Assembly (NCBI GenBank): GCA_025201805.1
Contig: MU619243.1
Span: forward strand, 124,001-188,000
Reading direction: 5' to 3'
Length of the DNA stretch: 64,000 nucleotides
Origin: Parasitella parasitica NRRL 2501
Taxonomy: Eukaryota > Fungi > Mucoromycota
Shown: piece after piece, positions 16,060 to 20,696 of the stretch
Numbering within the stretch: the first letter of the stretch is position 1
Layout: every line of letters starts with the position of its first letter
Position numbers and translations under genes: made by a program
The notes under the pieces: model-generated
The model's database searches: none
The model's input: the letters and a program-made list of their open reading frames with translations, nothing else
What the model was told of the DNA's origin: nothing

Positions 16060-16600
16060 AAGAATTATGAATACTGGACAAAATTTGTGGAAGCTGATGT
16101 TTTTAAACACTTGGCTCCCACTTCAGGATCCAAGCAAATCAACTAGATACCGGCTCGGCCACATTTATAAATTCGTTTACTCGAAAAAAAAAGACCACAG
16201 AAGACAGGTTCAGAGTTTTGGAGATGGTTAATCTTGGAAAAAATAGTCTTTATCAATGCTCAACAGCGGATGGTGTGGAGCAAGCCTATTCGCATCACAC
16301 TAATGCGCGCTCATTCTACTACAATCAATCCACGACCAAAAAAAAAAAAAAAAAAAAAAAAAGACGTTTGGAGCTCTCTTTTAGAAAAGGCTCTGATAGA
16401 CTAGCAGTTTACGAGAGAAAGAGTTCTGGTGCAAAGGAACCGATTATGTTTGTCGGTGATCGTGGGCACGGATTCGGCACTCGCATCAAGGGACACAGAC
16501 GATTTAGTAGGTTCTGGAAAGCGCACACAATTCAACAATTTAGCCCTATCTTTTTCGTACGGGAAACAGATACTGGGCTCGCCTTTTGATGGAGGCAATG
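16060..16600 (+). pseudogene. Probable Fanzor (eukaryotic TnpB-like) nuclease remnant
   Basis: RSFYY...RRLEL...DRLAVYERK...PIMFVGDRGHGFGTRIKGHRRF resembles, from memory, the segment before RuvC-II in Mucorales Fanzor-like proteins. Interrupted by an A-run; the downstream Zn-finger/RuvC-III region is absent. Confidence 0.6.
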
Positions 16601-16940
16601 CTTTTTGAAAGCAAGTAAACAAATATAAAAAGTGGGGGTATCTCGATTTTAATCGAGCGGTGATCTTTGGTTTTGACCATTCATACCATTTTTTAATTTC
16701 ATAGTTGTATCATTGTTTATTTCAGACGCCTTTATTAAAATGAAAAGTTTCTTCGCCAAAATGCATTTTAGTAACATATAAAAGCTCACTGCGAGATTTC
16801 TCAACTAGGCATCTATGATTGGTCCACAAAGACTCCTTTATTAGAAGCAGCCCATCTATCTAACTTTTTGGTACAAGGTTTTTGAAAAAAGAAAAAAAAA
16901 ACAGCCTTTTCTTTCCGTATCACTAACTTGATTGTTTAGC

Positions 16941-18372
16941 ATGGCAACAGGCACAGTGTATTCAAAAAGCTCAACTTGGTGGTCACCAAAGACGATCATG
17001 CAAATATTGTTTGTGAATTTTGGGCTATTCTTTCAATCTATTTGCTGCGTGTTGGGTCAACTATCTTCAATCTTTATATACCCCATTTCATTTAAGGTTT
17101 ACAGACAGATTATTGCTTATACAATGCACACATGGTCTCAAAATCTGGTTGCGTTGGTTCAATGGTTTGCACCTGCCAATGTTATAATGACATTTGATGA
17201 AAGTTGTGGTCTCATCGAAGATGTTGTGCAAAGAGATATTAATACAGGAAATGTACAAGGCTTAATTTTTCCAAATAGAATTATTGTTACTGCAAATCAT
17301 CAGGTTTATAATTGAAGTAGACTTCCTTCAAAATATAATTTACTCATTTCGCCTTCAGATTTATGCAGATTGGATTTATATTTGGTGTATTGCTTATCTT
17401 GCAAAGGCTCATGGCGCATTAAAGATTATTCTCAAGTCAAGCTTAAAGAATCTGCCCGTGTATGGACAGTAAGTTTAGCCTTTTATAAATTACCATTATA
17501 ATAATATTCATTAATGTAACGGCCTAGGGTAATGAGGATAAAGACATCTAATCGATGTTTAATCAATACTAAATGGCTTTATGTTTAGGGCATGAGATTT
17601 TTTGATTTCATATTTTTAAAACGTAAATTAGACGTGGATAAGGATAATATCATATCAAATCTAGAAAGATCAAAGAAAGGAAATCAATCACTATGGCTGG
17701 TTTTATTCCCTGAGGGAACTGGTACTTATTCCGAATTTGCTTTTTTTTATGTTTGTTTGTTAGATAACAAGCCTTTATGTTAGTTGTATCACCCTCTACT
17801 CGTAAGAGATCAAAAGAGTTTGCCGAATCAAATGATATGGTAAAATTTAGTATTTTTTTTTTTTTTTTTTTGAAGTCAAGGTACCGATAAACTGATATCC
17901 GATACAGCAAGATAACAGATACACATTATTGCCAAGATCAGCCGGCTTGAGGCTCTGTGCCACTACTTTGGCTGACAGTATCGATTACATTTACGATTTC
18001 ACTATTGGATATTCTGGAGTGGAAGCAGATGATATCCCTGAGCAAGTCTACACCATTCAAAGCATCTTCTTCTTTAACTTTTATCCCAAAAAGATACATA
18101 TTTACGTACGTCGATTCAGAGTGGACTCAATCCCTGTTGAAAGTGAAGTAGAGTTTAATCAATGGAACCTTGAACGATGGAAAGAAAAGGATGAGCTACT
18201 GGATCATTTTTATAAAAATCAAGTATTTTCGCACACTTTATCCGATCGAATTATTAATGTGCCTATTAAATTGAACAGTTCTTGGCTGAATCTAGCTCAA
18301 ATCTGGATCTTTATAGTGCCTTATCTTTTAATCTTGAAGAATATCTTTTTATTTAACAATACTTCTGCATAA
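16941..18372 (+). CDS. Lysophospholipid acyltransferase (LCLAT1/CST26-like PlsC family); needs a 1-nt exon at 17528
   Basis: Motifs ANHQIYADW, IILKSSLKNLPVYG-Q-GMRFFDFIFLKR, LVLFPEGT, LLPRSAGL, IYDFTIGYSG, WKEKDELL. Confidence 0.9.
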
Positions 18373-19064
18373 TGATTTATATCTAATAAATTCTCTATCC
18401 ATATCGTAGTGAAAATTTAGAGATAGACTTCAATTTCCTAATCCGGATAACAAACAAATAGATATACAAACATATTTCGACACAATCTTTCTGATAAGCA
18501 TAGTTCTTGTGTATAGCACAACATCTAGATATGCTTGGCAAAACAATTGTTATTTTTTCAAGAGACAGTGTGCTGAATCAATATGATGCTAATTCAGATG
18601 AATGGTTGCCATGGTGAAAATTCGATTGTACAGGTTTCAACCGCTTTGGGATTTTGGATCCAAGGAAACAATAATTTCCTAATCCGTTTGAAAAACAAAA
18701 TGATACAATGATAAAAGATAAATAGACATAATAACAACAAAGATTAGAAAAAAGGGTACTAAGAAGCCTTCCAATGAAATAATGATACAGATTTGCTACC
18801 AATATCAAGATGAAATATGGCTCATCTGGGCACGCCATAGATAAACGCAATGAGTAACCAATCAAAACTATCTCGAGTGATTGGGAGAAAAAGTCGCCTC
18901 ATCGCTTGTTAATATGATTTGCGCATTTGTATAAAAGGAACTGAGTTTGACATGTTCTCTATATTTCTGTTATATTTGACCATCATCTGTCAATCTCAGT
19001 CTTCTTTCTTACACCACCCCTTTGTCTCTTACATTCTATCCCCTAATACATTTTTTTGTTGTCA

Positions 19065-20696
19065 ATGTCAATCCAGCCAAGAGTCCCTATACCTCAAGGA
19101 GGAGCATCACTCATGCTCGCCTTCCAAAGCAAGCAGAAAAATATCATTGTTGTAGGTGACAGCACTGTTGCTGCCAGCCGAGTTTTGTCATGTCTCGAAG
19201 CAGATGCTATTGTCTATCTGGTCGCAAGCAGTGATTACATGTGCTCAGAACTAAAGTACAGAGTAGATCACCAGCAAGTTATTTTGCTCGGTCATGAATT
19301 CGAGTCTAGCATGTTGAAAAATCACTGCTTTGATTTGGGTTTCATCTGCAACATACCGTCCGAAACATCACCGGAAGCCATTGTGCGCCAGTTCCGTCAA
19401 CATCGCATCCCCGTTAACATAACTGATCATAGCGACCTCTGTGATTTCTTTATGACCTCAAATTACCGAGATCAGTCTCTTCAAATTGCCGTTTCGACAA
19501 ATGGACAGGCATCGAAATTATCCAGCCGGATCCGTCGTCATATTGCATCAAACCTGCCTGCAAAGCTGGGAGACGCTATCAACCGAGTGGGCGTATTACG
19601 CAAAAAGATCCGTGCTTCGGATCCCAGTTCTGCTGCGAGCATTCGACGTATGAAATGGGCGGCGCAGATTTGTGAATATTGGAGTATGGAACGTCTAGCG
19701 CAGCTGTCAGACAAGGATATGGAAGACTTATTAGATGCATACCACAATGATGAAGGCTACGAGAGTCTAGATGCCCACTCGCCAGTTGCTACGTCTGATA
19801 AATTTGGCTTGGTAAAGCCTTCGGTTCCTACTGGGAGTATTGCGTTGGTTGGATCTGGTACTGGCGACCCTGAGTTATTAACAATGGCAGCTCACAAAGC
19901 CATCAAAGAGGCGGATCTCGTCCTCGCTGACAAAATTGTACCTGCAGAAGTTATTGCATTAGTCACATGCGATCTGAAAATTGCTCGCAAATTCCCTGGA
20001 AATGCTGAAGCAGCTCAGCAAGAATTCAACGAAATGGCACTCAAGGCCATCAGACAAGGCAAAAGAGTTGTTCGCCTTAAGCAAGGCGACCCTTACTTGT
20101 TTGGTCGTGGCGGTGAGGAGGTCTTGTTTTTCCGCAAACACAATATTGTTCCTCGTGTCATCCCTGGTATTTCGTCCACAGTTGCCGCGGGTTTGCTAGC
20201 CGGTATCCCTCTAACACATCGCTCTGTCGCTTCCCAGTTCTTGGTTACTACTGGCACTGGCGCTCGTAACTCTTCTGCTCCTTTACCGACATTTGATAAA
20301 AATCGTACCGACGTATTCTTGATGGCTATTCACCGTTTGGAAGCATTGACAAAAGACCTCGTGACAAACCAACAATACCCAGCAGACATCCCATGCGCTA
20401 TTGTAGAAAGAGCTAGTTGCAAAGATCAGCGTGTGGTGTGGGGAAAGCTTTCCAACATTGTTCAGGTTCTAGAGAGTTGTGGTGGCAGTCGTCCTCCGGG
20501 ATTACTGATCATCGGATATGCTATCAATGTCTTGAAGCATGAAAATAAGGGCCCGGAAGGTGTTGCTGCCAACCTGATGACCGCCTCGGGGCTGGCTTCT
20601 GATGTCGTCTATGGTCAAGAAATGGCTAGTGAAGATATCATTGAGGGGAAGAATGCCAATCTTTTAGGCTTGCATGATCCAGAAAGTGTATTTTAA
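19065..20696 (+). CDS. MET1: Uroporphyrinogen-III C-methyltransferase with an N-terminal Met8/CysG-B-like domain (siroheme synthesis); intronless
   Basis: N-terminal PVNITDHSDLCDF...LQIAVSTNG. C-terminal LVGSGTGDPELLT, VRLKQGDPYLFGRGGEE, IPGISS, IPLTHR. Confidence 0.92.
   Translation: MSIQPRVPIPQGGASLMLAFQSKQKNIIVVGDSTVAASRVLSCLEADAIVYLVASSDYMCSELKYRVDHQQVILLGHEFESSMLKNHCFDLGFICNIPSETSPEAIVRQFRQHRIPVNITDHSDLCDFFMTSNYRDQSLQIAVSTNGQASKLSSRIRRHIASNLPAKLGDAINRVGVLRKKIRASDPSSAASIRRMKWAAQICEYWSMERLAQLSDKDMEDLLDAYHNDEGYESLDAHSPVATSDKFGLVKPSVPTGSIALVGSGTGDPELLTMAAHKAIKEADLVLADKIVPAEVIALVTCDLKIARKFPGNAEAAQQEFNEMALKAIRQGKRVVRLKQGDPYLFGRGGEEVLFFRKHNIVPRVIPGISSTVAAGLLAGIPLTHRSVASQFLVTTGTGARNSSAPLPTFDKNRTDVFLMAIHRLEALTKDLVTNQQYPADIPCAIVERASCKDQRVVWGKLSNIVQVLESCGGSRPPGLLIIGYAINVLKHENKGPEGVAANLMTASGLASDVVYGQEMASEDIIEGKNANLLGLHDPESVF

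What the first reader, a model, noticed from the sequence alone, without database searches (positions are those of the whole stretch)
17461..17594. A one-nucleotide microexon (G17528) is needed to build the acyltransferase ORF
Seen: the upstream exon ends TAT GGA CA|gtaagt (donor 17469) and the downstream exon starts tttag|GGC ATG AGA TTT TTT GAT (acceptor 17588). Direct joining shifts the frame by one base. Midway lies ggcctag|G|gtaatg, an acceptor at 17527 and a donor at 17529 around a single G. This gives introns of 59 and 60 nt, the typical size in this window, each with a branch-like TAA motif near its 3' end. Including the G gives ...PVYG-Q-GMRFFDFIFLKR, matching the family pattern PxxGxGMxxFxFIFLxR. 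Retaining either intron hits a stop (TAA 17470-72; TAG 17586-88). One-nt exons are extremely rare. Inference: splicing must be sequential and intron-defined, and skipping would act as a frameshift/NMD switch.
Basis: partly seen in the sequence, partly recalled or inferred. Interest (0 to 1): 0.82.

Follow-up and report, generated by a model that had tools for sequence, protein, structure and literature searches.

The report
Conserved one-nucleotide exon in acyltransferase
A fungal lipid acyltransferase gene carries an exon one base long (G17528) between two ordinary short introns; a cDNA contig confirms the spliced product, and the same layout occurs in distantly related fungi, where gene annotators often mishandle it.

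Summary
A spliced transcript contig from a public run matches the gene without mismatch.

Every single-intron placement of that gap is non-canonical (AG..TT, GT..TA or TA..AG). Only 59 nt + G17528 + 60 nt gives two GT-AG introns, both the size of the gene's other introns (55-68 nt).

The same layout, NN|GT...YAG|G|GTA...YAG|G, sits at the same codon in nine other loci:
- an old paralogue in the same genome;
- Mucor, Sporodiniella, Phascolomyces and Rhizopus (Mucorales);
- Bifiguratus, Jimgerdemannia (Endogonales), Diversispora (Glomeromycotina) and Basidiobolus.

The intron sequences and lengths in these loci are otherwise unrelated. This argues strongly against an assembly error or a single odd intron.

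The window is Parasitella parasitica, and NCBI's 375-aa model already encodes the Q made by CA+G. One-nucleotide exons are known in plant APC11 and VPS55, Fusarium CYP621A and 13 Coprinopsis genes. This is therefore a new, unusually deeply conserved member of a known kind. Splicing order and any skipping or NMD switch remain untested.

The parts
16878..16939 (+). 5'UTR intron (62 nt, GT..AG) just upstream of the start codon
   Evidence: The cDNA contig skips 62 nt here, GT..AG after a +2 shift. Sequence read.
16941..17303 (+). Coding exon 1 (ATG to ...ANHQ, 121 codons). It carries the first half of the NHxxxxD motif.
   Evidence: ORF and translation. Covered by the cDNA piece 16938-17299. 100% identical to P0158.
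17304..17358 (+). Intron 1 (55 nt, GTTTAT..TTCAG)
   Evidence: cDNA joint skipping 55 nt, GT..AG.
17359..17468 (+). Coding exon 2 (110 nt). It encodes IYADW...LKNLPVYG plus CA, the first two bases of the split Gln codon.
   Evidence: cDNA piece 17355-17467.
17469..17527 (+). Intron A (59 nt, GTAAGT...GCCTAG), phase 2
   Evidence: Sequence. It is part of the 119 nt missing from the cDNA. A homologous intron is present in nine other loci.
17528..17528 (+). One-nucleotide exon: G, the third base of codon CAG (Gln-158 of the 375-aa protein)
   Evidence: The cDNA keeps exactly one base between exon 2 and exon 3. This is the only AG-N-GT in the gap. AG|G|GTA is conserved in all ten loci.
17529..17588 (+). 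Intron B (60 nt, GTAATG...GTTTAG), phase 0, with TACTAAA 16 nt from its 3' end
   Evidence: Sequence, cDNA, homologues.
17589..17721 (+). Coding exon 4 (133 nt): GMRFFDFIFLKRK...LVLFPEGT, holding acyltransferase motifs II and III
   Evidence: cDNA piece 17587-17720.
17722..17783 (+). Intron (62 nt, GTACTT..GTTAG)
   Evidence: cDNA joint skipping 62 nt, GT..AG.
17784..17839 (+). Coding exon 5 (56 nt): (V)VSPSTRKRSKEFAESNDM
   Evidence: cDNA piece 17783-17838.
17840..17907 (+). Intron (68 nt, GTAAAA..ATACAG) containing a T18 run
   Evidence: There is a gap between cDNA pieces 17838 and 17907. The joint row was dropped by the tool at the repeat. Sequence.
17908..18372 (+). Last coding exon (154 codons plus TAA) with the Acyltransf_C domain. 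The 3'UTR continues beyond 18500.
   Evidence: PF16076 at 52 bits; cDNA piece 17907-18500; 100% identical to P0158.

Best explanation
The gene (+ strand, CDS 16941-18372) encodes a CST26/LCLAT1-type lysophospholipid acyltransferase of Parasitella parasitica. The codon after the conserved Gly of the P-x-x-G-X-G-M motif is split by two complete U2-type GT-AG introns lying one base apart. Intron A (17469-17527) is in phase 2 and intron B (17529-17588) is in phase 0. G17528 is therefore a constitutive one-nucleotide exon supplying the third base of CAG.

What is shown:
- The mature RNA keeps exactly one base.
- The layout is ancient. It is shared by two Mucorales paralogue lineages, Endogonales, Bifiguratus, Glomeromycotina and Basidiobolus.
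- The lone base is always G, which fits both the AG|G and the G|GT consensus. The codon is therefore always NNG: TGG, CAG, ATG, TTG, CTG or ACG.

What is inferred:
- Fungal short introns are recognised across the intron (intron definition), so exon length is not limiting.
- The signals overlap. The acceptor AG of A lies at positions -3 and -2 of the donor of B. The two introns therefore probably cannot be engaged at once and are removed one after the other.
- Either order leaves a normal substrate for the second step.
- Using the outer sites alone (120 nt removed) would give a frameshifted, prematurely terminated mRNA.
For: RNA evidence:
- a spliced contig with no mismatches skips 119 nt between 17467 and 17587 (ambiguity 2). 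Four other introns of the same gene are removed in the same contig.
- the three single-intron placements are AG..TT, GT..TA and TA..AG. The 59+1+60 reading gives GTAAGT..TAG and GTAATG..TAG.
- the four frame-preserving canonical single introns (131, 128, 137 and 161 nt) all disagree with the cDNA joint.

Comparative evidence:
- the own-genome paralogue on contig C10 has GGC AT|GTAAGT..64 nt..TTAG|G|GTAAAC..78 nt..TTTTAG|GGT ATG.
- the same layout is present in Mucor ambiguus, Sporodiniella, Phascolomyces, Rhizopus delemar, Bifiguratus, Jimgerdemannia, Diversispora and Basidiobolus ranarum. Intron lengths range from 51 to 208 nt.
- in an eight-locus alignment only the splice signals and exon flanks are invariant (mean column identity 38%).
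- the shuffle probability of AGGGTA is 0.001-0.10 per locus.

Protein evidence:
- NCBI protein P0158 of Parasitella parasitica is identical to the exon-by-exon translation and has ...PVYGQGMRFF...
- in annotated Mucoromycota and Basidiobolus proteins residue X is W, L, M, Q, T, S, A or R, all of which have an NNG codon.
- PF01553 at 66.8 bits and PF16076 at 50.4 bits.
Against: - No splicing intermediate, lariat or mutational test was available, so two separate splicing events are inferred rather than observed.
- The RNA evidence is one assembled contig from one run. Its library type is only guessed as RNA, although its five removed introns show it is cDNA. It may come from the same project as the genome.
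- Contigs hide minor isoforms.
- The Rhizopus delemar locus has in-frame stops in exon 2, so it may be a decaying copy or a poor assembly.
- In Bifiguratus a 7-nt exon (GGTATGT) is an in-frame alternative used by the annotators.
Confidence: 0.92

Rival explanations
1. One non-canonical 119-nt intron (GT..TA at 17469-17587, or TA..AG at 17470-17588) is removed in a single step. The internal AGGGTA is incidental or an intronic element.
For: The cDNA joint alone cannot distinguish this from the two-intron reading. The tool's own placement was AG..TT with an ambiguity of 2.
Against: - GT..TA and TA..AG are not recognised intron classes (established knowledge: GT-AG, GC-AG, AT-AC).
- At 119 nt it would be about twice the length of every other intron in the gene.
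- AG|G|GTA is retained at an intron-compatible place in all ten loci, although the flanking intron sequence is not alignable.
- Each half has its own consensus donor.
Confidence: 0.03
2. Assembly error: the genome really has one more G in the G run at 17588-17590. A plain 120-nt GT-AG intron would then give the same mRNA.
For: ACA + GGGCATG would be identical to the observed cDNA. No DNA run was laid to check the homopolymer.
Against: - The same one-base deficit and the same internal AG|G|GTA occur in nine other loci from eight independent assemblies and a second contig of this genome.
- A three-base run is not error-prone.
- A 120-nt intron would still be twice the local norm.
Confidence: 0.01
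3. The one-base exon is real, but it is also a regulated switch. Use of the outer sites alone (skipping G17528) produces a frameshifted, NMD-targeted transcript that tunes acyltransferase levels.
For: - The skipped form reads ...PVYGQA* here, and stops within about 20 codons in 7 of the 10 loci.
- The layout has been kept for a very long time although intron loss could have removed it.
Against: - Only the inclusion form was seen, at high word depth.
- Long retention is also expected from simple inertia.
- In 3 of the 10 loci the skipped frame stays open for at least 20 codons.
Confidence: 0.1

Closest known systems
Arabidopsis APC11 single-nucleotide exon, and the land-plant APC11 and VPS55 1-nt microexons (PMC4674806; PMC8831610)
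   Same: A constitutive one-base exon between two GT-AG introns. It is needed for the reading frame, usually missed by annotation, and conserved over very long times (across land plants).
   Different: Different kingdom and gene. The plant APC11 base is A. The plant case was verified with reporter constructs and RT-PCR, whereas here the support is one cDNA contig plus comparative evidence.
Fusarium CYP621A one-nucleotide exon (PMC12940212, 2026)
   Same: - Fungal.
- The lone base is G, boxed by AG and GT.
- The combined intervening sequence is about twice the median intron length.
- The base sits inside a conserved motif.
- Confirmed by SRA reads.
   Different: - That case was shown within one genus (20 orthologues) and supplies the middle base of a Gly codon.
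- The present case is in an acyltransferase and supplies the third base of a variable codon.
- It spans Mucoromycotina, Glomeromycotina and Basidiobolus, and two paralogue lineages.
Ultra-short exons in the long-read annotation of Coprinopsis cinerea (PMC12230235): 13 one-nt exons in 13 genes
   Same: It shows that fungal spliceosomes tolerate 1-nt exons and that omitting them breaks gene models.
   Different: That is a genome-wide count in a basidiomycete. The text read here does not report conservation or this gene family.
Stwintrons, especially the [D1,2]/[A2,3] type behind one-nucleotide intron shifts (PMC5587772)
   Same: Two fungal U2 introns whose ends lie one base apart, presumably removed by consecutive splicing reactions.
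   Different: - In a stwintron the internal intron interrupts a splice signal of the external one, and the alternative internal introns overlap by one G.
- Here both introns are complete in the primary transcript.
- Here they are separated, not overlapped, by one G, which stays in the mRNA.
Recursive (ratchet-point) splicing at AG|GT sites in Drosophila long introns (own knowledge)
   Same: An acceptor lies directly next to a regenerated donor, and the intervening sequence is removed stepwise.
   Different: - Ratchet points leave zero nucleotides and occur in very long introns.
- Here one base is retained and both introns are very short.

Membership tests
One-nucleotide exon (1-nt microexon between two U2-type introns) | The mature mRNA holds exactly one base between the flanking exons | tested here: met
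   The contig skips 119 of the 120 intervening bases. The joint is ACAG/GGC.
One-nucleotide exon (1-nt microexon between two U2-type introns) | In the genome the base is preceded by AG and followed by GT, each closing a complete canonical intron with the outer sites | tested here: met
   GTAAGT..CCTAG|G|GTAATG..TTTAG, with introns of 59 and 60 nt. This is the only AG-N-GT in the gap.
One-nucleotide exon (1-nt microexon between two U2-type introns) | No canonical single intron gives the observed mRNA | tested here: met
   All GT..AG pairs in the region were enumerated. The four frame-preserving ones remove 128-161 nt and contradict the cDNA.
One-nucleotide exon (1-nt microexon between two U2-type introns) | The layout is conserved in homologues while the intron sequence diverges | tested here: met
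   Ten loci have NN|GT..YAG|G|GTA..YAG|G at the same codon.
One-nucleotide exon (1-nt microexon between two U2-type introns) | Two separate splicing events shown directly (intermediates, lariats or splice-site mutants) | not testable with these tools
No contig covers either intron (bin 17484-17540 has depth 0).
Stwintron (spliceosomal twin intron) | An internal intron interrupts the donor, branch site or acceptor of an external intron, which becomes functional only after the first excision | tested here: not met
   Both introns have an intact donor hexamer and YAG in the unspliced sequence. Removing either one does not create a missing signal.
Zero-nucleotide recursive splice site | Juxtaposed AG|GT with nothing retained | tested here: not met
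   One G lies between AG and GT and is retained in the cDNA.
LPLAT/AGPAT acyltransferases, CST26/LCLAT1-like subgroup | PF01553 and PF16076 domains above Pfam's gathering scores | tested here: met
   P0158, identical to the gene product, scores 66.8 bits on PF01553 (cut-off 23) and 50.4 bits on PF16076 (cut-off 26.5). The last exon alone scores 52.4 bits.
LPLAT/AGPAT acyltransferases, CST26/LCLAT1-like subgroup | Catalytic NHxxxxD motif and the EGT motif | tested here: met
   NHQIYAD spans the exon 1/2 junction, and FPEGT ends exon 4.
LPLAT/AGPAT acyltransferases, CST26/LCLAT1-like subgroup | Acyl-CoA:lysophospholipid acyltransferase activity and substrate | not testable with these tools
   No assay is possible. 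The assignment rests on homology only.

The most novel reading that the evidence does not exclude
This one-base exon arose before Mucoromycotina, Glomeromycotina and Basidiobolus diverged. It has been kept by selection rather than inertia, because obligatory ordered two-step splicing, or occasional use of the outer sites alone (frameshift and NMD), sets the level of this acyltransferase. That would make it the most deeply conserved 1-nt exon known in fungi and give it a regulatory role.
Probability: 0.1. Interest if true: 0.75.

Novelty: new member of a known kind. Interest (0 to 1): 0.55.

Why it matters
- It adds a transcript-supported fungal example of the smallest possible exon.
- It shows that such an exon can persist across fungal subphyla and through a gene duplication. 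This parallels what is known for plant APC11 and VPS55.
- It is a natural test case for how an intron-defining spliceosome handles an acceptor and a donor that physically overlap.
- It explains a systematic annotation failure. Of the homologues inspected, many public models are split in two, skip an exon, drop three conserved residues, read an intron through or go out of frame at exactly this codon.
- A simple rule could repair these models and find further cases: an intervening sequence about twice the normal length, a one-base frame deficit, and an internal YAG-N-GTA.
- Earlier notes on this genome flag a 1-nt exon in VPS55 and a 2-nt exon in an MFS transporter, so such exons may be less exceptional in Mucorales than assumed.

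Tried and rejected
- Single canonical intron: all GT..AG pairs around the site were enumerated. The four that keep the frame (17458-17588, 17469-17596, 17460-17596, 17436-17596) are contradicted by the cDNA joint.
- Stwintron reading: rejected, because no splice signal is interrupted.
- Tandem intron duplication as a recent origin: introns A and B show no evident similarity to each other, and the layout is ancient. The origin remains open.
- Branch-site scan: a strict NYTRAY pattern found a motif in only about half of the 20 half-introns. Branch sites therefore add little either way.
- Third own-genome homologue (L003, 31% identical): its sequence around the equivalent motif is too different to place the codon, so it was not pursued.
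- The search of earlier findings by place returned nothing for this locus.
- Paper searches found no report linking microexons with Mucorales or this gene family.
- Joined frames were checked only inside local scripts. The database protein P0158, identical to the model, served for the whole-protein Pfam scan.
- Limits reached: the single read-laying run and all twelve encoding-contig look-ups are used. Intermediates and the genomic structure in Mortierellomycota and chytrids could therefore not be examined.

Full report
**What is in the sequence**

On the + strand a gene runs from ATG 16941 to TAA 18372.
- Exon 2 ends ...CTG CCC GTG TAT GGA CA at 17468 and is followed by GTAAGT.
- At 17523-17534 the sequence reads CCTAG G GTAATG.
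- At 17584-17594 it reads TTTAG GGC ATG.
- Joining 17468 to 17589 loses the frame by one base and reads ...PVYGQA*.
- Keeping G17528 gives a CDS of 1128 nt in frame.
- The two halves are 59 and 60 nt.
- Retaining intron A meets TAA at 17470-72. Retaining intron B meets TAG at 17586-88.

**The RNA test**

The look-up of sequencing runs returned one run holding 70% of the sampled words, which is what a spliced transcript would give. Laid on 16800-18500, it yields one contig of 1837 nt with no mismatches in six pieces.
- The contig lacks a 5'UTR intron (62 nt), intron 1 (55 nt), a 62-nt intron and a 68-nt intron.
- Between 17467 and 17587 it lacks exactly 119 nt, with a placement ambiguity of 2.
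- The run's library type is only guessed as RNA, but a contig with five introns removed is cDNA.

The three ways to place a single 119-nt gap have ends AG..TT, GT..TA or TA..AG. None is a known intron class. I enumerated every GT..AG pair in the neighbourhood. Four keep the frame open, removing 128-161 nt and deleting conserved residues, and all four disagree with the cDNA joint. The only reading with canonical signals is GTAAGT..CCTAG | G | GTAATG..TTTAG.

**Comparative evidence, which settles the rivals**

*Own-genome paralogue.* A six-frame search of the window's own genome with the last exon found a paralogue on contig C10.
- It is 40% identical over the last exon in that search, and 36-74% identical across exons by tblastn.
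- At the same codon it has TAT GGC AT|GTAAGT..(64 nt)..AATTAG|G|GTAAAC..(78 nt)..TTTTTAG|GGT ATG AAA.

*Other genomes.* A profile-free search of the protein library with the last exon gave relatives. Their genomic loci were fetched, and organisms were taken from source names. Every Mucoromycota locus, and Basidiobolus, shows the same layout.

| Locus | Organism | First two bases of the codon | Intron A / B (nt) |
|---|---|---|---|
| L004 | Mucor ambiguus (syntenic, siroheme synthase downstream) | CA | 53 / 55 |
| L008 | Sporodiniella umbellata | TG | 51 / 52 |
| L005 | Phascolomyces articulosus | TT | 128 / 185 |
| L010 | Rhizopus delemar (orthologue of the paralogue) | AC | 59 / 78 |
| L006 | Bifiguratus adelaidae | CT | 51 / 59 |
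| L007 | Jimgerdemannia flammicorona | TG | 125 / 87 |
| L009 | Diversispora eburnea | TG | 208 / 140 |
| L016 | Basidiobolus ranarum | TG | 75 / 85 |

- In all ten loci (including the window and L002) the middle reads YAG|G|GTA.
- In an eight-locus alignment only the exon flanks and the splice signals are invariant, and mean column identity is 38%.
- In dinucleotide-preserving shuffles an AGGGTA leaving two intron-sized halves appears with probability 0.001-0.10 per locus.
- An assembly error would have to recur in nine further loci. An incidental motif inside one odd intron would not survive this much divergence.

*Where it is absent.*
- The gene of Furculomyces (Harpellales) and a metagenome contig are intronless.
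- Saitoella has GGA TGG GCA ATG uninterrupted, with an intron further on.
- The family's ancestral residue at the split codon is evidently Trp (G-W-G-M). In Mucorales it has drifted to Q, L, M, T, S, A or R, all of which have an NNG codon. This is what a fixed lone G would enforce.

**Identity of the gene and of the window**

- NCBI protein P0158 (Parasitella parasitica, 375 aa) is 100% identical to the exon-by-exon translation and contains ...LKNLPVYGQGMRFFDFIFLKRK....
- The window is therefore P. parasitica, and the public protein model already contains the residue made by CA+G. I could not see how its CDS is written.
- P0158 scores 66.8 bits on PF01553 and 50.4 bits on PF16076.
- NHQIYAD (NHxxxxD) spans the exon 1/2 junction, and FPEGT closes exon 4.
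- It belongs to the CST26/LCLAT1-like branch of the lysophospholipid acyltransferases. The substrate is not known.

**How annotators fare**

Public models often fail at exactly this codon.
- Mucor ambiguus is split into two genes of 110 and 202 aa.
- A second P. parasitica model starts right after the site.
- Jimgerdemannia and R. delemar go out of frame.
- Diversispora and Apophysomyces skip exon 2.
- Sporodiniella and Linnemannia use a downstream AG and drop G-x-R or G-M.
- Bifiguratus uses a 7-nt exon.
- Geosiphon, Funneliformis, B. ranarum and Mucor flavus read intron B through (W/L followed by V-x-K...).
- Many models named 'acyltransferase-domain-containing protein' get it right.

**Mechanism**

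Shown: one base is kept. Both flanking introns are canonical and of normal size. The arrangement is ancient.

Inferred from established knowledge of splicing:
- Short fungal introns are paired across the intron, so a one-base exon need not be 'defined'.
- The AG of intron A lies at positions -3 and -2 of intron B's donor. U1 at donor B and the 3' splice-site factors of intron A compete for the same nucleotides, so removal is probably consecutive.
- Either order leaves a normal second substrate.
- After removal of A, donor B sits in CAG|GTAATG, a better context than AGG|GTAATG. This mildly favours A first.
- G is the base that satisfies both AG|G and G|GT, which explains why it is G everywhere.

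Only the inclusion form was seen, and contigs cannot show rare forms.

**Comparison with what is known**

One-base exons have been described in:
- Arabidopsis APC11 (PMC4674806);
- land-plant APC11 and VPS55, with deep conservation and pervasive misannotation (PMC8831610);
- Fusarium CYP621A, which its authors call the second example and the first in a fungus (PMC12940212);
- 13 genes of Coprinopsis cinerea (PMC12230235).

It is not a stwintron, because no splice signal is interrupted (compare PMC5587772). It is not a zero-nucleotide recursive site either. I found no report for Mucoromycota or for this family.

**Verdict**

This is a real feature, correctly read by the first stage. It is a new and unusually deeply conserved member of a known, rare kind.

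- The spliced model was searched exon by exon, by reference.
- Read laying received 1701 letters.

Noticed in passing
same genome, other pieces (earlier notes s1-685864, s1-703571): First-stage notes flag a one-nucleotide microexon in VPS55 and a probable 2-nt microexon (GG) in an MFS transporter of this genome. VPS55 carries a conserved 1-nt microexon in land plants (PMC8831610). A fungal counterpart at the same codon would be remarkable and should be compared.
   Followed up: no
window 16878-16939: A 62-nt GT-AG intron in the 5'UTR ends one base before the start-codon context (ag|cATG), with a CACTAAC branch motif. The cDNA contig confirms it.
   Followed up: partly
P0197 versus window 17592-18372: A second protein labelled Parasitella parasitica (209 aa) is only 79-95% identical to this gene and begins just after the microexon. 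Two assemblies under this species name seem to differ substantially, or P0197 is a different copy.
   Followed up: no
window 19056-20696; L004 4542-6182; L008 2880-4222: A siroheme synthase / uroporphyrinogen-III methyltransferase gene (an uninterrupted 546-aa ORF) lies directly downstream of the acyltransferase. This synteny is conserved in Mucor ambiguus and Sporodiniella umbellata.
   Followed up: no
L010 538-648 (Rhizopus delemar, 1.7-kb contig): The exon 2 equivalent has two in-frame stops (ILVDWM*FWFLGYLYKANG*LK...). It may be a decaying copy or a low-quality contig. It still keeps TTTTAG|G|GTAAAT.
   Followed up: no
L007 598-826, L016 1393-1558, L009 about 1923-2036: In Jimgerdemannia and Basidiobolus the exon 2 equivalent is split by an extra intron after IYADWIY(I/L)W that Mucorales lack. 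In Diversispora the tblastn match is interrupted at the same spot, which may be the same intron.
   Followed up: no
window 16340-16365 and 17855-17872: A 26-base A run lies upstream of the gene, and an 18-base T run lies inside the 68-nt intron. The reads tool dropped the joint row at the T run.
   Followed up: no
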